Source: Ostrea edulis (Eukaryota). Taken from it: a DNA stretch of 64,000 nucleotides. Shown piece after piece: positions 16,801 to 59,598 of the stretch. The stretch lies in contig NC_079165.1 in the NCBI RefSeq assembly GCF_947568905.1, forward strand, positions 46,128,001-46,192,000. The letters are read 5' to 3'. The translations under genes were made by a program, and so were the position numbers. Below the pieces are notes generated by a model that was not told the origin of the DNA, searched no databases, and saw only the letters and a program-made list of their open reading frames with translations. Position 1 is the stretch's first letter, and each line of letters opens with the position of its first letter.

Positions 16801-19800
16801 TTTATCTTTACATATGTAACCAATATGCTTACTTTATTGATGCGTAGTGAATTAAACACATTCTATCATTGGATTTAACCATTTGCATTAGTAAATAAAT
16901 CATGATAATGTTAACATTTACATGGATTTCAAAGCTCTAAAATTGAAATATACATGTGCAGTGTATTTGCCTATGCTTACACTGTACATGTATATTAGCA
17001 CTACAAATAATTATACAAAATTGTGAACCGTATGCACTAAAACTAAAACACTATATGTAACTATGAATAAATAAATCAATCAATAGTAACTAACATAATC
17101 ATTTACACTAAATAAACATTTCATCACACTTTTACTTCTTAAAGAGGCCGGTCATTTCCATCAGTCACGATTCACGGGTTTGGCGGTCTGTCTAAACAAT
17201 ATTCATCGTCCACAGTTGATTTAAGAATATCGTGTTTGTCATGTCGGTTGACAACATTCTTTAACCAAAATTTCATCTGCCAGAGTTTATATTTCTTATT
17301 CTATAATTATCCAAGCCAATATCGGGAGAACAAAATCATTTAAGTTAATAACATTAAGACCTACTACTGCTTTGTCTAGCCAAGTGCACCTATTATTTTC
17401 ATGATGCGATAATATCGGAACAAAACTCGGGTGAAACCAACTTTACGGGTACATACAAACTTTAACTGTCATTTTCCTTAAAATTGTAATTTTCTAACTG
17501 CTACCCAGAGTTTAAAAAATTGAAAGCAATAAAACTCTACAACATTGTAACAAGAATCAATCGTACACAGGTACATTCTACATGCGTTACAGTCTAAACA
17601 TTAAAAACTTACTACATATACATGAACATGAATGTATATTTCATGCCAATTAGCAGTATAAAATCCAGAATCTAGAAGTATAATCTACACTCTTTAGATT
17701 TGAATAAGTCGATATCAATTTACGAATCAGTACAACTGATATGTGTAGCAGACACTAGCAGTTCAACAACAAAAATATCATTACAGCATGCTGTTTAATT
17801 CATTTTAAAATACTATTAGGCTATTGATCAAGACTATAAAATAATATGCTACAGATTTACAAAATTTAACACTACACGCAATACAGATCTTATGTGCCAA
17901 AATTGGCAATACAAGATCGGCACGTGCTATCTAACTGACATATCATCACACACCACCTAATTAAAGGGAGGTGTTGATGGGGTACAGGTAATCGCTTCAA
18001 TTAGACAGTTTGGCTTGTTTTCTTTATAATTTACGCCTTGCTAAAATTGTCCGACACAGACCTTCCCTCAAAAAAAAATTACCGTCCGGATTAACGGTAC
18101 AATTTTCAATGCATATTAACGTTTTGTGGTAAAAAATGATCGTCCGGATCCGGAACGTGAATTTCCGGATTAATGATGCAAAATAACGTATAAAAATTCC
18201 GTTTCCTTGAAAAATCGTCCGGAAGGTGAAGCGTCCAGATTAATGGCGTCTGGATTACCGAGGCTCCACTGTATAGCATTTTAGAATATAAGTACACTGA
18301 CATATGTACATGCAGAGCAACATACAATCCGATAAAAGTCAAGTCATCGAAAACAGTCTTGTTCACTACAAATACAAAATTGATTCCATCTTTAAATGTA
18401 CAACATAATCAGAATTCATTTCTGAGACCATTATTACTGCAAACATACCTTTAAAAAGAATCTTTTGATTGGCTGGTGGAATTTCTGTGACATCATAGAT
18501 TTTCTTCACTAGATCCTCCACTGTCAGCACATTTCCCTGTACGGCTTGTAACCCAATGTCGTGGACTTTGGAACCTATATAAAGCAGAGTAACAAACAAA
18601 CCACTGCAGCACATACACTCCTTACTACACATGTAAACACATGCACACTAATCATAATTATAAGGACTAGGCTTCTTCATAACATTATGTAGTGATACTG
18701 TTTGCTACATGTATATCATAAAACTCTCGTCCCCATCTTTCAGAACATGTTGGCTGCGATTCAATTGGCACAGTTGCAAGAACACGTACTAATTTATGTT
18801 CCATGCTTAAATATACGTATGAAACAGAGAGATTCTAATTCATGATGGTACTAAATTTTGAATATGCTAAAACAAGTATACACATTCAATATTTACTATA
18901 TTAATTACAATAGGGAGCATATATCAGTTTCATTTACAGGAGCTAGGTTGCTTGCAGTATATAAGCCCTTTGATAATATTATGAAACAAAATCACATCCT
19001 ATGTATGAGAAATTGACAAAAATAATCATTGAAGTGCTCAGCAACTTTGGTGAGAGTTCCTACACCACCCCTCAAGCCATGGAATTTCATAACTTAAATC
19101 AACTGTTTTATTACCTAATGCAACAGATTTATAGTTACATCACATGTACATATGTAGTGGGTTTTTTTTTTTACTTATTTTTTCTGTAAAACTATTTAAG
19201 TTCCTCTAAAGCATTTTGACTGTCAGTCAATAGTTTTTGAATTTTTGGACTGGCTATCTATTGGACTGGCAATGTACATGTAGTAGTGCTTTAACATTGT
19301 TAAAGGAAATTTAAAGTTACTAACTATTTTGCATTAAAATCAGTTGTTCAAAAATGGTGGATGTTTATTATATAATAGGTTGCATGAATACAACTTGGCA
19401 AACACTATACAGTGGACTTTTATATCCTTTTCAAAAATGGTAACTTCTAGAAAGCCATCAACACATTCAATAACATTTTGATTGAATTCTTGGTATTTTT
19501 AGAGTCCTTATCTTTAAGAAGAATAACCCAATCTCCTTCCTGTAGCTCTGGGAATCTTACTAAAGCTGCCATGTTTGTTGTATCTGCACATTAGTGCATT
19601 TCGAAACGAATACCATACTTCCAGACCTGGGAAAATTAGCCTCGCCTATTGACTGATAAGACATTAAATAACTTTTTCTAGACGGCATCTGACATGTTGA
19701 CTGGTAGATGGAGGAACTGTAAAGTGTCAAAATGTAAGAAGTTCAACTGCAGTCTCTCAACATGTAGTCAGCTTCTCTTAGTCAAAATAAAAAGAAGAAA

Positions 19801-25062: not shown

Positions 25063-25447
25063 GTGCAAATGTATATGATAGGAACTATATCTAGTTTTGT
25101 AAATATTATCTGTTTTGTGATCGTCTGGATTTTATTGAATTACTCATGAAATTATAAAAAGTCTTCTATTTCCTTCTTCTAAAGCTATCATACCTATTTC
25201 TCCATCCTGAAATATTGTTGATCAGAAACTGCAAACACATATCTTTTAAGCCTGGCCTTATTACGTGGTGTTTGAACAGTGCAATTTGCATGTTTTTATG
25301 TTGGGAACAACCCCTTGGACATCCATGCATGTTTAACAGAAATCGTTTAAACTTTATTTGCTGAACTTTAACAACTTTGACATGTATCTATCAAGGCAGT
25401 TTTTTTTTAAACATGGCAATGATACATAGTTCAAAGAACTCCAATTC

Positions 25448-25457
25448 CTTATAAAGA
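25448..25457 (+). promoter_or_regulatory. TATA box of the cysteine-rich peptide gene
   Basis: cTTATAAAGa with TATAAA at 25450-25455, about 40 bp upstream of ATG 25491. Confidence 0.5.
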
Positions 25458-25490
25458 ATGAACCAGACTCCCTTTCTGATTGAGTACAGA

Positions 25491-26981
25491 ATGCAGGCGC
25501 ACGCATATTGTGGGTTCCTGGTTGCATTTCTCTCTGTGATACACATCGGTAAGTACGTATTGTTGTGTATATATATTGCTGTCAATGAAACATATACGAT
25601 TGCTTGCAAAATATATTTGATTTTAATATGAAACTCCATTTATGGAATTGTACTTTCTCAGTTGATTACGAAGACCGGCCTGGTTTTCTCGAAATAAACT
25701 TTTAAAAGTTGAAACCTGGAACTAAGTCTGAGATTTTCTTCCGATTTTGCCAAAACAAAAAACAAAAAAAACCCGCAAACTTAAGTTCAAGATTTTTTTG
25801 ATTTTTTTTGGTGGAGAAATCCAAGCAAGGAACAACAAAGTAAGGAGAATGATGTCCATTTATATGGCGTGTAAAACGCTGCAATTTTATACAAATTTTG
25901 AGTTATAAGAGAAAATCTTGATTTTTATTCAATAATCTTGATATTTATATGCGAAAAGTTTTATTCTTACATGTATATTCGATAATCATAATATTTATAT
26001 GCGAAAATTTTGACGTGCGAACAATTTTGATTTATATTCGATAATCTTGTGATTGATATGCGATAATTTTGATTCATAAATTATATTCGATAATCTTGAT
26101 ATCTAAATGCAAAAATTTTGACGGGCGAAAATTTTTATTTGTATTCGATAAATCTTGATTTATATTCGATAATCTTGATATTTGTATGCAAATATTTGGA
26201 TTTATATCCAATTATCTTGTTATCTATATTCGATAAATTTTGATTTATATTCGATAATCTTGTTCAATTTATCGAATATGTATAAATAACAAGATTATCG
26301 AATATAAATCAAGATTTATCACATATCATACTGTGTATATAAATCAAAATTTTCGCATACAGATATGAAAATTATCGAATATAAATGAAAAATGTTGGGC
26401 AGAAATATCAAGATTATCGAATATACATCAAAATTTTCGCATATACATATCAAGATTGTCGAATATAAATAAAACATTTCGCACATAGATATCAAGATTA
26501 TAGAATATAAATCAAGATTTATCAAATATAAATCAAAATTTTCGTATGTAAATATAAAGATTATCGAATGCACATAAAAAAAATTCTCATATAAATATCA
26601 AGATTATCGAATATAAATCAAGATTTGTACATTATTGCAACGTTTTATACGCCATACAATACTTTTAACTTTTCTTTCAATTCTTTTAAAGCAGATGCCT
26701 ACTCATTCAATAAAGGAATTTTCTGTCCTAAAACTCCATGCTATTTCCCGCCACCTAATTGTAAGATCGCCTTCAGGACAATGATATACTCGGATGGCTC
26801 TTGTGAGATGGTTTGCTATCACAAATGCATGTGCGACCCTCGTCGGGCCGTTTGTTCAAAGAGTCTGGAAGGACCCAATACTCCTGCGGTTCCACGCTGC
26901 TACCCTGTGGAGCAGACAGAGACGCTTAGTGACGGCACCCAATGTAAAGTCTGTTTACATCTTTGTGATCCTATTTCATGA
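25491..26981 (+). CDS. Small secreted cysteine-rich peptide (115 aa, signal peptide + 2 x 6-Cys repeats), family not recognised
   Basis: Exon 1 25491-25548 (MQAHAYCGFLVAFLSVIHI + G|gtaagt, phase 1). Exon 2 26692-26981 follows a pyrimidine tract and aaag| (phase 1): ADAYSFNKGIFCPKTPCYFPPPNCKIAFRTMIYSDGSCEMVCYHKCMCDPRRAVCSKSLEGPNTPAVPRCYPVEQTETLSDGTQCKVCLHLCDPIS*. TATAAA at 25450. Both exons are GC-richer than their flanks. The hydrophobic N-terminus ends in an A-D-A cleavage-like motif; there are 12 Cys in the mature part. Confidence 0.75.
25865..26654. mobile_element. 790 bp TA-flanked MITE with inverted internal (tttatattcgataatcttg) repeats, inside the intron of the Cys-rich gene
   Basis: ta|TGGCGTGTAAAACGCTGCAA ... 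TTGCAACGTTTTATACGCCA|ta; the internal repeat orientation flips near 26270. Confidence 0.75.
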
Positions 26982-27329
26982 TAAAAACGAGATTTAGTTG
27001 TCTATTTCTATTTCCTTTGTTCCTTCACTCGCTAAATTAGATGCAGAAATGACACAAATTAATACTGGGTTCGGCGCTCCTGCATGTGAATCCACAGGCA
27101 ATCATATCGCTTGGGTTCGAATTTACTACAGTGTATTAAAAATAGAAAATTCAAACCCAAGTACCGTTAATATAAATGCCTGTGTGTGAATCCACAATCG
27201 TGACTTCATGCGACAACTGAGTTCCCAGCTGCTCAACATGTGTCACAAAGTTTTCATTTTATTAGAGTTTCCTTTTTTTCAGTACTAGTGCTATGATGTG
27301 GATTTAAACTCGTGAAATGGGTACATGAA

Positions 27330-28950
27330 GTTCACACGATTTGATTTTTGAAACAGGAGTAATTCCATCCCAGTGGACATATTGTAATATAATTCCACTG
27401 CATACAAGAAAACGAAAGCAACAACTCTGATTCCAGAAACCGTACAACTATTACACGGATTAGTGGTTTGAGGAAATTGTTTACTGTAGTTTTGAATGCG
27501 ACACTTAATGAATATGCTAACAGTATTGAACTGATTGCAGAAAATCAAGCTGGTTTGGGTAAATTAAAAAAATTCTACACAGGACCATACTTTTACTCCA
27601 CATACACTTTTAGAAATTTTCAAGAATCTCAAAACAAGCAAAAAAAAACCCCTAAAACCATAATGCGATTTTATTGGTTTTTGAAAAGCATTTGCCTCTG
27701 AATGTCGTATTGGTCTCTGGATCAAAATCTTATTTGATGGAAAATGTTTAAAACTTGTAACAAAATTGTTTAATGGTATTAAGTTAAAAGTGCCATATAA
27801 TGGCTTGTACAATAAAAATATTTCTATGTAATGTAGGAGTTAGACAGGGTGAAAATCTATCGCCGTCTCTATTTGCTTTATATCTAAATGACTTTGACGA
27901 ATTTATGTTCTGTAATAATGGTCAAAGGTCTTTCTCGTTTATCTGAGAAATTAGATAATAGTCTTGATATACATTTAAATTTTATAGTCTTACTGTGTGC
28001 AGATAATACAATATCATTGTCAGAAACTCCAGAACAGGTCTGATGGGTGGTGTGTTGTTTTTTTTACGAATATTGTAAAACAAAGCACATAAAGCTTAAT
28101 AATATGAAGACAAAACTTATCATTTTCGGTAAAGGTGCTTTGGTTACCACTGCTCAGCTGTATCTAAATACAATGGAGAAAACATTGAAATTGCAGGTAG
28201 TTTTAAATACATGTACATGTATTTGGACATCACATTTTCTAAAAATGGTTGATTAGTTTAACATTACGGACTTATTCGATAAAGCCACTTGGGATATGTA
28301 GTGTGATAGGAAAAATGTAGAAAACATATTCTATATATCAATTGCAAATTAGACATGTCTGATAAAATTGTAAAACCTAAACTCCTAGTCGCATGTATAT
28401 GACGTATGGTGAATTTGGAAGATTTCACATCGCAATTGTGGACTATCTTATGTATGGCAGCAGGAACAACCTGTAAATGTGAACTGGGTCAAAAGATTTT
28501 TTTTTTTTTTTTGTTCTTTAAGATCAATTTAAAGAAAGTTGGACTGGTGNNNNNNNNNNNNNNNNNNNNNNNNNNNNNNNNNNNNNNNNNNNNNNNNNNN
28601 NNNNNNNNNNNNNNNNNNNNNNNNNNNNNNNNNNNNNNNNNNNNNNNNNNNNNNNNNNNNNNNNNNNNNNNNNNNNNNAGAATATTTAAAAACACTCATT
28701 GACTTTAGAAATATCTTCTTAATTCAACTGAAATATAGTCTAAATTGTTAGGATGGTACGATAGATTTTGCTACATTTACCTAGAAAAAGTAGAATTTGT
28801 CAATGGTGTACCAGAAACGACATCGGTGACGAATTTCTTTATCTATACTTGTACATGTATACTTGTACATTTATACATGTAAAACAAACCATATTCCAAA
28901 CTATTATTGCACAAATCCCAACATTTATGAATTTGACCAAATATATGTAA
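27330..28950 (+). mobile_element. Degraded non-LTR retrotransposon RT (CR1/L2-group), spans an assembly gap
   Basis: Broken frames give FETGVIPSQW...IIP, KLFTVVLNATLNEY...LIAENQAG, VGVRQGENLSPSLFALYLND, LLCADNT (YADD equivalent), LNNMKTKLIIF, and C-terminal RICQWCTRNDIGDEF. Confidence 0.85.
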
Positions 28951-29834: not shown

Positions 29835-30011
29835 ATAATAATTTCACATACATCCTTTGGTCTAAGTAGGACATTCTTCATTTTTGTTACTAGTATATTA
29901 GATATACCCGTATAGCATTTGTTTCTCTGTTCATTTGAATAAGGGTTGGTCATGCTCCACTCCTAAACTTTATATAGGGATGACGCAACTATATCATAGA
30001 ATTATACATTC

Positions 30012-30300
30012 ACCACAACCAGAGTATGTATATTCATTACATGTGTATGTAACGCTGTCAATCACAACCAGACAACCAGAGTATGTATACTTATTACATG
30101 TGTATGTAACGATACCAATCACAACCAGAATATGTATATTTATTACATGTGTATGTACCGATACCAATCACAACCAGAATATGTATATTTATTACATGTG
30201 TATGTACCGATACCAATCACAACCAGAATATGTATATTTATTACATATGTATGTACCGATACCAATCACAACCAGAGTATGTACATGTATACTTATTACA
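30012..30300. repeat. 49 bp minisatellite (~6 copies)
   Basis: Unit caaccagaatatgtatatttattacatgtgtatgtaccgataccaatca. Confidence 0.9.
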
Positions 30301-33020
30301 TGTATATAAATTTTTCATTTCGAACCTATAATTTAACAACAATGGTGAAATTGACCTTCAAACTTGGCCATCATTTCCCAATTTAAGCGCTGATAATGAC
30401 GTAAATTTTCACTTTTAAGTCCTTCAAGACAGGCCTGCCTCTAAGATTATTTTTTGATATTTTGATTTTACAATCGTAAGAACAATTTACAATAGTATTT
30501 TTAGGGGCAACGCTGCCTTGGGGTCGAAATTAACGAAAAACCTATAAATTAGGGGAACTGGTTTAGAAAACCTTATTCATATTTACAGGTGCATTACTTG
30601 TGCTTAAAATAGCTCAGTCAACTGCACCGCTGGCAGAAAATGCTGCGATTATTTTTTGCCATGGTTGGAATCCGAATCACGCCACACTTTTATTTTTTAT
30701 TTCGCATTTTCAACACTTTTTCATATCTTGAATATTTATGAGTATATTTTCCTTCCATAATCTAGTTTAAATGCATATTCATTCTGTATATAGAAAACAT
30801 GAAAAGAGACCACAAATTCTAAATTCTCTGCAGTCAAGTGGAACTATCCTCGCCGTGGTCGATTTTATCCCAAGGACAATAATCATCCAGTCTGCGTTAC
30901 TCTACGGAATTACGTGTGCGACGGGAAAAAAGCACGTCATACAAGAATCGTTGTGTTTGCCTGTCCAGCATGTATTTTGGAAAGAGTTCTGTTGTTGGTG
31001 AAGTACTGAAGAATCGGAGTATTTCATTACTGGGAAAAGATGTACACTTAGGCGATGGTTTATACCAAAAATGTAGAAAGAAAGTCTATCGGTTAGAAAA
31101 GAGTGGGAATGGGGTCGTGTTATGTACAGACCTGTGACTTTCACGTTTAATGCTGACCGTCTGGTGATGGAACAGTTACTACCTGTTTTAATGACGTACA
31201 TGTAGTACTATATCTGCACGTGCTTCTTCGGATTTCCATTTTATAATACATGTATCAGTGATATGTATTCTTAATGGCAGTAATAAATGTATATCAAGTA
31301 GGGAAATATCCCAAAAGTACTAGTAATTAAGACCGGATATATATCATTACAAAAATATGAGATATCATATTAGAGCTCAAAATGCGATAACAACGCAAAC
31401 TACGTATAGCGTGCTTGTGCATCGTTATAAGAGGTCTATTGAAAGTCCACATGCTAAAGTCATGAATGAGCTTTTTGTAAAGACTTAAACCAGATCTGGC
31501 CTAATCGTGCTAATACAGTTTTTCTTTTGTTACCATGATTTGATCCTTTAAGGAAGAGGTTTCGAAAAGAATATTTTTTGTTCCATACTTTGGGGGGAGG
31601 GGTGTTGTTATGGTAATTTTTTTTTTAGTAAAAATGAAATGAAAACAATTTTTAACTTATTTCCATAATTTCCAACATTTGCAGTTTTGTGCTTTGTATT
31701 TGTTTTTGAGAAGAACATTAAGATAACTTTGCAAGACATAACAGAAGTATAATGCCCTCAACCAATTTAATATTGAGTATACGAGAAAAAATTGGAGGGT
31801 TGTGTTGTTTCAACCTCTATAATACCACGTGTTGCATTCAGTACCAAAACCATATATTTGATTACTTATATACACAGAAACATTATACATGTACTATAAC
31901 ATGGTTGTCTATGCATCACGTACCTAGATCTATTAACGAATCTGTTAATTTTGCGATTAAATGAGTCGTTGTAAATTCGTGCAAAAATTCAATTTGTTAT
32001 AAAATGTACATATTTAGAAAAAGTTAAAACGTTATTTCACATTGTAATACAAAGCTATATTTTTATGAAAGTGTAGGTCACAATTTCAACATGATTCATG
32101 GTAGAGTTAAACAATGACTTGTTTCTGGTGGAAGCATAGTTGTCAGTTGGTGTTTTCATATACTAGGAGGTTTTGTTTTTTTGTTGTTGTTTTTTTTGCA
32201 CTTTACCAAATTTTGTTGATGATTCGTACCTAAATCATTTAATAACTTTTAAAGTTATGACTTATTTTTGCATATATATAAGTAAACAATTATATTCAAT
32301 CAATTCAGTCATTTGTAGCACTATCACGTAGCACGTTTTGTACTGAGTAAAACTACTTGATCTATGATAATAATTTTTATGTACTTTTCTGATATCCGAG
32401 TAAAATGGACATTTCAATTTCAAAATTCTCCTATGTCCTTATGAGCAGATAGCGTACAGACTCTCATGGGTGTTATTATATTCCCATAAAGACCAACTTC
32501 AATATGATTACAAATTCTAAACTTAGTTCTTTTCTATATTTGAAATCATTTGGTTTTGTCGGGTATGACTGCAAACCAAATCCATCAACAACATATTGCA
32601 AAAGAATGAAGATACCAAAGAAAAGATGGTTTGCCTTTTTACATCAAATATCCTTTGTTGTGTAAAATTGTATATATAGAATTAAAATTACGTCTATATT
32701 ATCCTATTATGTGCAATACAATCCTAACGTTGACAACTCTTCCTTAACGTTCAATACCCGCTATCATTTCGTAAAATCATATCCTCATAACAGGCTTTCA
32801 AAACACAATTATCAGTCTACTTAACTTCAATCAGTATTTAGAACTTCTTGATGAATTATTGAACTATTTAAAGCGTGATATAATTGAACTACAGACATCC
32901 ATCACATGATAAATTGATTACTTTCAACTAATTAAATGAAAATTCTAAACACAAAACATAAGTGAGAGAGTTAAGTTATATATCTGGACCCAGTTGCTCG
33001 AATGTTAGTCAACTTTAACT

Positions 33021-55300: not shown

Positions 55301-58300
55301 CTCATTATAAAGTTTCTGCCATTCGATCTATAAAATCCTTTTATTAGTTTCAGCTGTATCAAAATCAGTTTATTCTGGAAAAATCGACAATGTCTCGATA
55401 AATGTGATAGTTGGGAGTATCACGGAAGAAAAGGTAGTTTTATTTCTCCTTCATAACAATGTACAAATTACAAGTTTGGAAAATGATGATATTAGTAATT
55501 CACGTGAATGGAAATTAAAATGGTGGTGAAACTTAAGGAAAGAGGTAAAAATACAAAATGCGTTTCACTCATACTCTTATGTTCAATGTAGGTTGCTTTA
55601 GCATGTTTCACAGCATTCGACTTAACGACATGTTGTATTTACAAAATGCATGTAAGATCTTTATAACGACCATGAAATTGGCAAATAGATATTTTCTTTC
55701 AATTCACTAGGTGGACGTCCTTGTGAATAGTGTCTCTACAGATTTGGGAATGACCTCGGGGACTGCAGCTGCGGTTTCTGCTGCAGCTGGCTCAGGGATG
55801 ACTAACGAAATTGCCCAAGATTATCCGAATGGAATTACATATGATGACGTTGCTGTTACCTCCGGCCACAACCTAACAACTGTTAAGAAAATATACCATG
55901 GTGCCCTTCTTCCGTGGTATTCAAAACGCTCGGGATCAACGAAACTCCCTGATGAGGTACATTTCTTAACATGACGTTCATGTATAGTCTTATTCTCTTT
56001 AGAGAAGTCGAGAGGCATAGCCTACATCGACTTCTCTTCGCAAGCATTCATGTTTTGATTCTGGAAAACGTGTAAATGCCGGAGTCGGTGACGGTTTATG
56101 CTTCGACCGACGTTTCGACTCAGATGTGCCTGGATTTACGCAATAGACAAGTTGTTTTCAAACATTTAACAGCAATGCTCAAAACTGTCACAAAGAAATC
56201 AACACGTACTTGCTTTTATTCCATTTTCAACATGTCTCCTGTCCCGGGTTTACGTTAACTGGTCTTGGGAGCTGTCACAATAGGGAACCAGTTAAGAGAA
56301 AAGCAGGCTGACGTAATCAGAGTTGTGATTTAAACCCGGGACAGGGGCATGTTGAAAATGGATTAAAAGCAAGTAAGTGTTAATTTCCTTGCAACGGTTT
56401 TGTGAATTGCTGTTAAATGTTTGAAAACAACTTGTCTATTGCGTAAATCCAGGCACATCTTAGTCGAAACGTCGGTCGAAGCATAAACCGTCACCGACTC
56501 CGGCATTTACACGTTTTCCAGAATCAAAACATAAATGCTTGCGAAGAGAAGTCGATGAAGGCTATGCCTATCAACTTCTCTAAAGAGAATAGTATAGTCT
56601 GAACTTTACGTTGATAAAATCATATCTAGTTACGTCCGTTTGTTTGTAGTTACTGGAGGAATTTGTCTTGAAATGCCTTCAGAAAGCGAACTCTAGCGGT
56701 CACTCATCAATAGCTTTTCCAGCTCTCGGAACCGGATATCATAAATTTCCAGCAGATGTTGCATCAGCTAGTATGGTTTCAGCATTTGATGATTTTTGTA
56801 AGCAAACTAAAAACAAAACTGTCTTGGAAATACGCGTGGTGCTATTCGCAAGTGGTCCTGATCTGCAGCAATTGGAAAAGGTTTTGTATCTATTTATCAT
56901 TCATCATAATTTGATAACCACACTGAGGGATAAATCCTAAATAAGAAATGATAACACACGACACACTGTTTAGTAAAGCAAAAAATGTATAGCATCTCCA
57001 TAAAATGTATAGCATCTCCATAAAATGTATAGCATCTCCAAAATTTACAGGCCTTCCAGGATGAATTAGGGAATTTGTCACCGGGAAATAGTACAAAAGA
57101 ATCAGGAACAGCCGGGAAACAAGGTAATTAATATCTGAGATTATGTAGTCCGATAAATTACTTAATAAAATGTGAAGACAACGAACAGTGATCAATCTCA
57201 TAGATCCAATAAAGAATACAAAATTAAGAGCAGGGCAAACACGGACCCCTGGAAACTCCAGAGGTGGTATCCAGAGGAGTAAGCATCCCATGTTGACCCG
57301 TCACACCTGCCGTGGGCCCTCTGCCTTGATTACCAACCAATAGAGTATAGGGAGGATGTAAAACTCAAAACGAATATGCAGAATTAGCTAGAAGCATTTC
57401 AACTAATTGCTGCAAGTTAGTTAGAGGATGAACTTTTTTAGCATCGAGAGAATCTCTTTATTTGGAAACAGTTTGGGGTCAGCTTCGAATTAGGCGAAAA
57501 ACAACATGAATAAAAACAATGTATAAAGAGGACCAGAATTTGACTCCAAATACATGTATATATTTCTTATCAAAATTACAACACAAGAAACACTCTAAAT
57601 TGCATTTACCTAAATGTAAATCTATAAAACTTCTTGTGTACCAACTGTAGGTGAAAGGAGTAATCTGTAGTAATCTGTAGTCAAATTCAGTATGTAAAGA
57701 ACGGCCTAACAATTGGTATGAAACACGTCCGACAGCTTCGACTTACCGACATGTTGTATTTGCATAATACATGAAAGATCATTATAACGACCTTAGAATT
57801 TGCTAAATGCTGACTTCAAACGAGAAACCCTGCACATCAACGTATTTGTCAGTGCCGGTAGCTTGCGTTGATTTTTTTTTTTTTTTTTTTTTTTTTGTGA
57901 GCAGGGAAAACGTTAGATTTTGTGCTTGAACATACTGTAAAATATTCAAATAAAATCAAAATGTTATTACGTGATTTAACGATCTTTGGAAATTTAATTT
58001 GCTCAATGTGACCATGATTAAGAAATGACAGTAAATGATATGCTTTTTTCATTGAATAATTTTCAGCAAGCAACACTAAACACATACCTCTTCGAAGGCG
58101 AGTCCCTACAGTAGCTCCAAAACGTGGAACAAAAGCATATCTCATATATAAATACCAGGAGGCTGCACGGACCCCGCCCTACTGGACGAAATTTACCTGT
58201 CAGAAGAAACTCAAAGATTGGAATTTAGCGGTGAAATCTGGAGCTTCATCGCACATGGAAAATGTCGACCAAAATACTTTTCAAAGTATTGAGGCTGCTT

Positions 58301-59565
58301 TTAAAAGTACGTTGGGTATAGCACAAATTGTCAGCATACATAGAATAGAAAACGTTGAACTTTTCTTGAAATACACCGATGAATGTCAAAGACTGTTTCG
58401 GAAAGCGATTGTGGAAGGAGATTTTGTACCTTTGGAGAATGTAACGGGTTCAAGTGGACCGGCTAAGACAATGCAATATTTGGATTCGACGATGCTGAAA
58501 CACACACATCCAGAAATAAACGAGTATTATTTCTTTCACGGAACAAAGCCACAGAGCGTTGCTGTGATTTCTGGACAGGGGTTAGACAACAGACTGGCAT
58601 ATACAGGGGGTTTACTCGGGACAGGGGTCTATGGCGCAGAGGACGCTTTGAAATCCAATGGATATACAGGTAAAGTGTGCTCTGATTTAGAAATTCTTAA
58701 TAAAGTTTTAGTATTCTAAGTATGATGATGATGATATACTAATAATGAAAATTTATATTGCGCTCTATATAAAACGAATTACTCTAAGGCGCTTCACGTG
58801 GATAAAAAATTATCATAGTGTTATGGTAGTATGAAGATCATTTTCATAGCATATCCTTTGGATAAATCTTTACACTTATACCGAACAGTTCATAACTGAT
58901 TGATTGTTTCTGGACTAAATTGTGTAATCTTAATCTAAAATGTCTGTCCTTCATATTTCTCTCTGATGAATCTTTACGTGTATTATGTACATGTATATTG
59001 ATTATTTGTTTGTATGTATTTTATTGAGCACCACATATACCATTTTGTAGTTTTCAGAGTGTAAAAAAGACATAAACTTTAACTGTATTGAAGTTACCTA
59101 TGCTAGACATCCGCGTCCGATTATTAGTGAGTTTTTTTTTTACTAAGTCAACACCTTCTGTGACACAGGACATCCGTTTCTACGACCTGTGTTATCATTT
59201 CTACGTCAAGCGCTTGGTGAGGAATAATCGCTACCTGTTTTATGGACTCGGATATCAAACCCGTGCCTCCCATAAAATTGAGCGCTCTACCGTCTGATCT
59301 ATCTTGCATTCCATAGAACGTGTAAATAATCTCAAGAAATTAATTAATATCTCACGATGAAATTAGCCCTTTGGCGATTTTTGTCGCTCAAGTTTATTAC
59401 AATGTATATCAAACCATAAATGATTTCTATTTTACCATAAGTCACCATACTTTATACAAAGAATCGCTATGGGATGGGGAAGATTCCAACTGATATAAGG
59501 AAGGTCAGGCGATACTGATATAGTAGAACGATTTCCGGTTAATTGATTGGTTGTTTTATGTCCCG

Positions 59566-59598
<33 letters not shown>

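What the first reader, a model, noticed from the sequence alone, without database searches (positions are those of the whole stretch)
25448..26981. Unrecognised two-exon gene for a secreted peptide with two 6-cysteine modules
Seen: a TATA box, a 58-nt signal-peptide exon with a strong gtaagt donor, and a phase-matched second exon. The predicted mature peptide (~93 aa after ADA) has C-x4-C-x6-C-x13-C-x3-C-x3-C followed by C-x6-C-x14-C-x14-C-x2-C-x3-C. Both modules have SDG(S/T) before the fourth Cys and an H two residues before the last, implying internal duplication. The spacing loosely recalls antistasin-type inhibitors but does not match any family I can name. Inference: a disulfide-stabilised effector (protease inhibitor, antimicrobial or shell-matrix peptide) that automated annotation could miss. 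It lies between a chaperone gene and an immune-type PARP. The acceptor is a NAGNAG (aaagcag), allowing a one-residue variant at the cleavage site.
Basis: partly seen in the sequence, partly recalled or inferred. Interest (0 to 1): 0.75.

Follow-up and report, generated by a model that had tools for sequence, protein, structure and literature searches.

The report
Orphan 12-cysteine secreted peptide gene candidate
A coherent two-exon gene model in what is probably the flat oyster would make a secreted 93-residue peptide built from two copies of a disulfide-stapled beta-hairpin module; it resembles no known family, but I could obtain no RNA evidence that it is expressed.

Summary
That covers the ATG at 25491, the 58-nt hydrophobic exon, the GTAAGT donor, the phase-1 AAAG/CAG acceptor, a 96-codon second exon with 12 Cys, and the two similar modules.

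Chance is unlikely. In 20 Mb of Markov-simulated sequence, none of 2056 open frames of at least 96 codons had 12 Cys. Exon 1 is the only one of 63 phase-compatible upstream candidates with both a good donor and a hydrophobic core. The two halves align at z = 6.7, yet 11 of 14 identical residues use different codons and the DNA halves are not similar. That pattern indicates long-term selection on the protein.

AlphaFold2 models module 1 as a long beta-hairpin (pLDDT 87) with SDG(S/T) at the turn.

No relative was found by any route:
- Pfam and PDB sequence searches
- phmmer against 1.84 billion representatives
- fold searches
- the organism's own genome, where the gene is single-copy

The antistasin, protease-inhibitor, antimicrobial and shell-matrix ideas have no support. 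I read it as a probable real, lineage-restricted secreted peptide gene of unknown function. Interest is modest.

The parts
25450..25456 (+). TATAAAG motif 41 nt upstream of the ATG; possible TATA box (weak evidence in AT-rich DNA)
   Evidence: read directly
25458..25460 (+). alternative in-frame upstream ATG (would add MNQTPFLIEYR to the N-terminus)
25491..25548 (+). exon 1 coding part: 19 codons plus 1 base, MQAHAYCGFLVAFLSVIHI; n- and h-regions of a signal peptide
   Evidence: Of 63 phase-1 ATG..GT candidates in the 6.6 kb upstream, only those ending at this donor (this ATG and the in-frame ATG 25458) have both a good donor and a hydrophobic core.
25860..26659 (.). 800-bp foldback or MITE-like element in the intron: terminal inverted repeats and mirror-image arrays of 21/42-nt units; a dispersed family in this genome
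   Evidence: at least 382 first-look candidates; the 40 scored full-length matches are 81-89% identical
26665..26669 (+). TTAAC, candidate branch site 23 nt upstream of the acceptor and outside the inserted element
   Evidence: by eye; inference
26689..26694 (+). tandem AAG|CAG (NAGNAG) acceptor; exon 2 would start at 26692 or 26695
26692..26981 (+). exon 2 coding part: (A)DA then a 93-residue mature peptide with 12 Cys and 11 Pro, TGA stop at 26979-26981; local GC 0.47 against 0.34 for the window
26709..26828 (+). module 1 (exon-2 residues 7-46): predicted long beta-hairpin 24-32/38-46 with SDGS at the turn
   Evidence: pLDDT 87.4
26841..26846 (+). Arg-Arg in the linker CMCDPRRAVC between the modules; possible but unproven convertase site
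26856..26966 (+). module 2 (residues 56-92): 36% identical to module 1, hairpin 70-78/84-92 with SDGT at the turn
27083..27192 (.). small palindromic dispersed repeat about 100 nt after the stop; holds the nearest ATTAAA (27135-27140)

Best explanation
This is a real, single-copy, lineage-restricted protein-coding gene with two coding exons.

Proposed mechanism:
1. Exon 1 supplies the hydrophobic part of a signal peptide of about 22 residues.
2. A phase-1 intron, later enlarged by an 800-bp foldback transposon, splits the signal peptide just before its Ala-Asp-Ala cleavage site.
3. Exon 2 encodes a mature peptide of 93 residues and 10.4 kDa.
4. After entry into the ER and signal cleavage, the peptide folds into two tandem modules that arose by an old internal duplication.
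5. Each module is a long beta-hairpin with an Asp-Gly turn. Four aligned cysteines per module, plus four unaligned ones, staple the hairpins. All 12 are presumed to be paired.
6. It then acts outside the cell as a stable binding module. My best guess is a mucosal or haemolymph defence effector or a signalling ligand.

Shown: the sequence features, the improbability of chance, the protein-level duplication, and the absence of relatives.
Inferred: splicing, secretion, disulfide pairing and function.
For: - The ORF and all splice and signal features are present.
- An order-3 Markov null of 20 Mb gave 2056 open frames of at least 96 codons. None had at least 12 Cys and 7 had at least 10.
- Exon 1 is the unique good candidate among 63.
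- The two halves align with score 53. This was reached by 2 of 5000 shuffles and by 3 of 20000 shuffles that keep the Cys in place, z = 6.7.
- The DNA halves are not similar (p = 0.34). Of the 14 identical residues, 11 use different codons, including Ser TCG against AGT. The repeat has therefore been kept at the amino-acid level.
- There is an even number of Cys.
- GC rises to 0.47 over exon 2.
- Module 1 is modelled with pLDDT 87.4 as a hairpin whose turn is the conserved SDG motif. The whole-peptide model shows the same hairpin twice.
- Promoter, exon 1 and exon 2 are unique in the 895-Mb genome, so this is not a transposon ORF.
- A phase-1 intron inside the signal peptide, with all Cys modules in the last exon, is also the layout of mussel MgCRP-I genes (PMC4558851).
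Against:
- No homologue or paralogue was found anywhere, so conservation across species is unshown.
- No product of this ORF is in a protein collection that does hold ORF calls from this species.
- A codon-usage test trained on the neighbouring PARP exons did not favour the frame (-10 bits against -0.6 for another frame). The training set is tiny and of very different composition.
- There is no canonical AATAAA near the stop. The only ATTAAA lies inside a repeat.
- The signal peptide n-region has no Lys or Arg.
Confidence: 0.6

Rival explanations
1. It was a gene that is now silent or decaying. The ORF was shaped by selection in the past, but the locus is no longer expressed. Possible causes are the foldback element ending 32 nt from the acceptor, or loss of the promoter.
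For: No RNA holder was listed. No product is in the protein collections. An 800-bp palindromic insertion lies close to the acceptor. There is no clear poly(A) signal.
Against: The ORF is intact over 115 codons with all 12 Cys. Both splice sites, the pyrimidine tract and a branch-like site are preserved outside the insertion.
Confidence: 0.17
2. It is a chance open frame in non-coding DNA that happens to be Cys-rich and to have a signal-like mini-ORF upstream.
For: Open frames of 128 codons occur by chance at about 10 per Mb per strand in this composition (211 in 20 Mb). The codon-usage test is neutral to negative. There are no homologues.
Against: None of 2056 simulated frames had 12 Cys. The protein-level internal repeat has p of about 1.5e-4 with different codons. 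The in-phase consensus donor and hydrophobic exon are unique. An AxA site forms across the junction. The joint probability is well below one per genome (my estimate).
Confidence: 0.08
3. Exon 2 is real but belongs to a different transcript structure. It might have other 5' exons, or an internal donor that continues into downstream exons.
For: No read evidence fixes the exon boundaries. The TATA motif is weak evidence, and the 5' UTR would be only about 10 nt if it is used.
Against: No other phase-compatible start exon lies in the 6.6 kb upstream. The even Cys count and the CDP after both modules suggest the ORF is complete. The downstream DNA consists of repeats and a reverse-transcriptase fragment.
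Confidence: 0.07
4. This is a variant of the main reading. The precursor is cut at the Arg-Arg between the modules and gives a two-chain or two-peptide hormone-like product.
For: RR is at mature residues 48-49 in the linker, flanked by C48 and C55. Another finding in this genome reports processed secreted Cys-rich proteins (s1-311831, unchecked).
Against: It is a single dibasic site with Pro at P3. There is no amidation signal, no conserved propeptide and no homologues to test for conservation of the site.
Confidence: 0.08

Closest known systems
MgCRP-I cysteine-rich peptides of Mytilus (PMC4558851)
   Same: Both are bivalve, small, secreted and lineage-restricted. In both, a phase-1 intron splits the signal peptide after about 17-19 residues, and all Cys motifs, including multi-module forms, sit in the last exon.
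   Different: MgCRP-I has the array C(X3-6)C(X1-7)CC(X3-4)C(X3-5)C with an adjacent CC. It also has a conserved propeptide ending in KR/RR, four exons, and a large multigene family. Here there is no CC, no propeptide exon, only two coding exons, a single copy and no sequence similarity.
Antistasin-type inhibitor repeats
   Same: Both have tandem internal repeats of a six-Cys unit in a secreted invertebrate protein.
   Different: There is no Pfam hit for the peptide or its halves even at E 10. The units here are 40-45 residues with a 13-14-residue gap and are predicted as long hairpins. Antistasin units are about 26 residues with short gaps (my knowledge).
Growth-factor cystine-knot proteins (TGF-beta, NGF, IL-17, glycoprotein hormones)
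   Same: Both are about 90-110 residues with two long beta-hairpins separated by a loop. Activin, GDNF, NGF and IL-17 appear among weak Foldseek rows.
   Different: Those rows have E of about 1 and TM 0.2-0.28, which is noise level. There is no CxGxC motif. The Cys that follow the hairpin turns lie at the tips and not at the base. The VIA-align search gave best Z 3.6, to unrelated proteins.
Mytimycin, the 12-Cys antifungal peptide of mussels (from my knowledge; named only in reviews found)
   Same: Both are bivalve secreted peptides with 12 Cys.
   Different: phmmer found no similarity. The size and spacing differ. Not tested directly.
Knottin-like secreted peptide family reported elsewhere in this genome (s1-271411)
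   Same: Same genome. Both are small secreted Cys-rich peptides in no described family.
   Different: That family has about 15 genes with six Cys. This gene is a singleton with 12 Cys, and no paralogue was found by protein, DNA or motif search.

Membership tests
Antistasin family (Pfam PF02822) | Match to the family profile | tested here: not met
   hmmscan against Pfam-A at E up to 10 gave 0 families for the whole peptide, both halves and both hairpins.
Antistasin family (Pfam PF02822) | Compact six-Cys unit of about 26 residues with short gaps | tested here: not met
   The gaps here are 4-6-13-3-3 and 6-14-14-2-3. The family's spacing is from my knowledge.
Other curated Cys-rich domains (Kazal, TIL, WAP, EGF, VWC, Ly6/uPAR, defensins, granulin, IGFBP) | Match to any Pfam profile, or to a solved structure by sequence | tested here: not met
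   Pfam gave 0 hits. PDB phmmer gave 0 hits at E up to 10.
Growth-factor cystine knot | CxGxC and CxC ring motifs at the base of two fingers | tested here: not met
   There is no CxGxC. The only CxC is C46-M-C48. Fold matches are at noise level.
MgCRP-I | C-C-CC-C-C array and a conserved pre-pro region ending in a dibasic site | tested here: not met
   There are no adjacent Cys and no propeptide between the signal peptide and the first Cys. The definition is from PMC4558851.
Generic secreted cysteine-rich peptide gene (signal exon plus mature exon) | N-terminal signal peptide with a small-x-small cleavage site | tested here: inconclusive
   There is a 13-residue hydrophobic core (mean Kyte-Doolittle 2.67 over its best 10-residue window) and A-D-A before Tyr. 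No SignalP was available, and the joined precursor was not searched or scored, by rule.
Generic secreted cysteine-rich peptide gene (signal exon plus mature exon) | Spliced, polyadenylated transcript | not testable with these tools
No RNA holder was listed.
Generic secreted cysteine-rich peptide gene (signal exon plus mature exon) | Even number of Cys in a compact mature region under protein-level constraint | tested here: met
   12 Cys. The internal repeat is conserved in protein but not in DNA, and 11 of 14 identities use different codons.

The most novel reading that the evidence does not exclude
The gene is expressed and founds an undescribed disulfide-rich domain. The domain is a ~40-residue Cys-stapled long beta-hairpin with a PxTP...PxC...SDG(S/T)...VCxHxC signature, present here as a tandem pair. 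It would be restricted to the Ostrea lineage or evolving too fast to trace, with a role in oyster defence or signalling.
Probability: 0.45. Interest if true: 0.5.

Novelty: new variant of a known kind. Interest (0 to 1): 0.33.

Why it matters
Bivalves rely on large, fast-evolving sets of small secreted cysteine-rich peptides for defence and signalling, and many escape automated annotation.

If this gene is expressed, it adds a new disulfide-rich module with no sequence or fold relative. It would be a candidate effector in the flat oyster, a species of conservation and aquaculture concern that suffers from Bonamia and Marteilia. It would also be a clean example of a domain built by internal duplication.

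As it stands it is one unvalidated singleton, so the value is mainly as a lead for annotation and peptidomics.

Tried and rejected
No junction or coverage data could be obtained. Later DNA queries were 25380-25620, 25790-26690, 25850-25950 and 26660-27260. Loci that the genome search fetched by itself with flanks (L001, L003, L004, L010, L012) contain the places but were never used as queries.
2. The runs found have kind '?'. I could not tell whether they are DNA or RNA, and I draw nothing from them.
All searches used exon 2 or its parts by reference.
4. The only phmmer hit, P0001 (E 6.6e-4), is a tandem-repeat translation. Its score is summed over repeats and no Cys is aligned, so I rejected it.
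5. The weak own-genome hit L002 (E 9.65) is noise.
6. Motif patterns for D-G-x-C...C-x-H-x-C in the own genome returned the gene itself plus three hits. L011 is an EGF-type repeat, and L013 and L014 are short frames. This matches the roughly 1.7 chance hits expected per pattern. The first two pattern calls were over the length limit.
7. Fold searches gave nothing above noise. This covers the whole-peptide model (pLDDT 62) and the module model (pLDDT 87) against PDB by Foldseek, PDB representatives by VIA-align 2, and BFVD.
8. The metagenome scan found no relative. A profile of the two modules found none either.
9. Exact look-ups of four ATG-started ORFs overlapping the exons found no public contig.
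10. The codon-usage log-likelihood test was uninformative.
11. The ESM Atlas was busy on five tries.
12. A literature search for a motif string and for oyster 12-Cys peptides found nothing specific.

Full report
**1. What is there**

- An ATG at 25491, with A at -3, opens 19 codons, MQAHAYCGFLVAFLSVIHI.
- One further base and a consensus GTAAGT donor at 25549 follow.
- The acceptor comes 1143 nt downstream. It is aaAG|CAG at 26689-26694, behind an 85% pyrimidine tract and a TTAAC branch-like site.
- The exon that starts at 26692 is in phase: G+CA makes Ala.
- It reads ADA then 93 residues to a TGA at 26979-26981.
- It has 12 Cys, with gaps 4-6-13-3-3-1-6-14-14-2-3 as claimed.
- The mature peptide would be 10.4 kDa with pI 8.0, 11 Pro, no N-glycosylation site, and one Arg-Arg in the linker between the halves.
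- A second in-frame ATG lies at 25458, just after the TATAAAG at 25450. Either start gives the same mature product.
- With either NAGNAG acceptor, the residues before Tyr still fit the -3/-1 rule. The variant would therefore alter only the signal peptide (inference).

**2. Is it more than chance?**

Open-frame length alone is not convincing. An order-3 Markov simulation trained on the window gives 211 open frames of at least 128 codons in 20 Mb of one strand. Four further observations are not explained by chance.
- Cysteine content. None of 2056 simulated frames of at least 96 codons had 12 Cys in the last 96 codons, and 7 had 10 or more.
- The upstream exon. I examined 63 phase-compatible ATG..GT mini-exons in the 6.6 kb upstream. 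Only this one, and its extension from ATG 25458, joins a good donor to a strongly hydrophobic core.
- The internal repeat. The two halves of the peptide align with score 53. That was reached by 2 of 5000 plain shuffles and by 3 of 20000 shuffles that keep every Cys in place (z = 6.7). The DNA of the two halves is no more similar than shuffled DNA (p = 0.34). Of the 14 identical residues, 11 use different codons, including Ser TCG against AGT. An old duplication whose amino acids were kept while synonymous positions drifted is the mark of selection on a translated product. I take this as the strongest evidence that the frame is, or long was, coding.
- Local composition. GC rises from 0.34 to 0.47 over exon 2.

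A codon-usage test trained on about 780 codons of the neighbouring PARP exons did not favour the frame. Given the training set, I treat it as uninformative.

**3. Anatomy of the peptide**

MAFFT aligns residues 7-46 with 56-92 (exon-2 numbering) at 36% identity. The invariant columns are K, PxTP, PxC, T, SDG and VCxHxC, and each unit is followed by CDP (the C being C48 after the first unit and C92, the unit's own last Cys, after the second). Four Cys per unit are in register. C12 and C17 on one side, and C48 and C55 on the other, are not.

AlphaFold2 gave two models.
- Whole exon-2 peptide, single sequence: only pLDDT 62. It shows the same element twice, a long two-stranded hairpin (24-32/38-46 and 70-78/84-92), with the conserved SDG(S/T) at each turn and a disordered linker at 53-70.
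- Module 1 folded alone with module 2 as its only alignment partner: pLDDT 87.4 with the same hairpin.

I have no coordinates, so the disulfide pairing is not known. A confident hairpin does not prove that the protein exists.

**4. Relatives**

None were found.
- Pfam-A at E up to 10 gave nothing for the peptide, its halves and its hairpins.
- PDB sequence searches gave nothing.
- phmmer against 1.84 billion representatives of 15 billion proteins gave one hit. It is a tandem-repeat artefact with no Cys aligned.
- The word-indexed search of 5.8 billion proteins gave nothing for the peptide or for the two-module profile.
- Foldseek and VIA-align 2 gave only noise. For the whole model the best values were E 0.14 and Z 3.6. 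For the module they were E 2.6 and Z 2.6. BFVD gave E 0.85.
- Activin, GDNF, NGF and IL-17 appear among the weak rows. Their TM is 0.2-0.28, and the sequence lacks the CxGxC motif, so I reject membership of the cystine-knot growth factors.
- In the organism's own 895-Mb genome, the peptide, the promoter with exon 1, and exon 2 are each unique.
- Degenerate patterns for the hairpin motif found only the gene itself plus the number of chance hits expected.

As a control on database content, I searched the neighbouring PARP catalytic exon. It found a 99%-identical ORF called on a Logan contig that is colinear with the window at 99.88% (SRR25445072). It also found some 20 relatives at 52-86% identity. 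The collections therefore do hold oyster material, and the blank for the peptide is not simply a gap in coverage. Short Cys-rich ORFs may still go uncalled on genomic contigs.

**5. Expression**

Expression could not be tested. The look-up of sequencing runs listed four runs from two studies that hold 84-100% of the sampled words of 26692-27150. All are of unknown kind and none is on record as RNA.

I worked beside those places from then on and sent none of their letters to any search.

Exact look-ups of four ATG-started ORFs overlapping the exons found no public contig.

**6. Surroundings**

- About 800 nt of the intron (25860-26659) is a foldback element. It has terminal inverted repeats and mirror-image arrays of 21/42-nt units, and it belongs to a dispersed family with at least 382 first-look candidates, of which the 40 scored full-length matches are 81-89% identical.
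- That element ends 32 nt before the acceptor and leaves the branch-like site and pyrimidine tract intact. The original intron was about 340 nt.
- About 100 nt after the stop lies a small palindromic dispersed repeat (27083-27192). It holds the only nearby ATTAAA.
- A reverse-transcriptase fragment follows near 27840.
- Upstream on the minus strand is a BAG1-like co-chaperone gene. Its BAG domain is at 8397-8582 (E 9.8e-7) and a ubiquitin-like exon is at 18369-18647.
- A macro-PARP gene runs on the plus strand from about 47.5 kb.
- Neither neighbour bears on function.
- Earlier notes of this scan call the genome the flat oyster. I did not check that.

**7. Verdict**

- Real secreted-peptide gene: probability about 0.6.
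- Once-functional locus that is now silent: about 0.17.
- Chance ORF: under 0.1.
- The function is unknown. Nothing supports a protease inhibitor, an antimicrobial peptide or a shell protein in particular. Given the habit of bivalves, my best guess is an extracellular defence or signalling module.

It is a new family within a well-known kind of gene, namely lineage-restricted secreted cysteine-rich peptides with a signal exon and a mature exon, as in mussel MgCRP-I (PMC4558851). Interest is modest until a transcript or an orthologue is shown.

Noticed in passing
window 25860-26659: An 800-bp foldback or MITE-like element fills most of the intron. It has terminal inverted repeats (TATGGCGTRTAAAACGYTGCAAT) and a body of 21/42-nt tandem units in mirror orientation. 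It belongs to a dispersed family with at least 382 first-look candidates in the genome; the 40 scored full-length matches are 81-89% identical.
   Followed up: partly
window 27083-27192: A small palindromic dispersed repeat matches both strands at about 70 scored places in the genome, roughly 100 nt after the stop codon. It contains the nearest ATTAAA.
   Followed up: partly
window 27840-27900: This stretch reads VRQGENLSPSLFALYLNDF in frame, a reverse-transcriptase motif. It is probably a decayed retroelement fragment.
   Followed up: no
window 8397-8582 and 18369-18647, minus strand: A BAG1-like co-chaperone gene. The BAG domain exon has Pfam E 9.8e-7, and a ubiquitin-like exon has a weak ubiquitin-family hit. 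The likely 5' end is near the GC-richer stretch at 20.9-21.3 kb.
   Followed up: partly
window 47526-47987, 56650-56937, 58060-58716, plus strand: Two macro-domain exons and a PARP catalytic exon of a macro-PARP gene. About 20 relatives at 52-86% identity are present in Logan, JGI and ENA ORF calls.
   Followed up: partly
window 57874-59580 / L015: Logan contig SRR25445072_23885 is colinear with the window over 1707 nt at 99.88% identity. It is unspliced, so it is probably genomic DNA of the same species.
   Followed up: partly
window 28540-28680: A run of N (gap or masked).
   Followed up: no
window 29900-30390, 44500-45170, 900-1470: Long open frames here are tandem-repeat translations, some of them Cys-rich by composition (for example 19 Cys in 110 codons at 1092-1421). 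They show that Cys-rich frames in this genome can be repeat artefacts, which the candidate is not.
   Followed up: no
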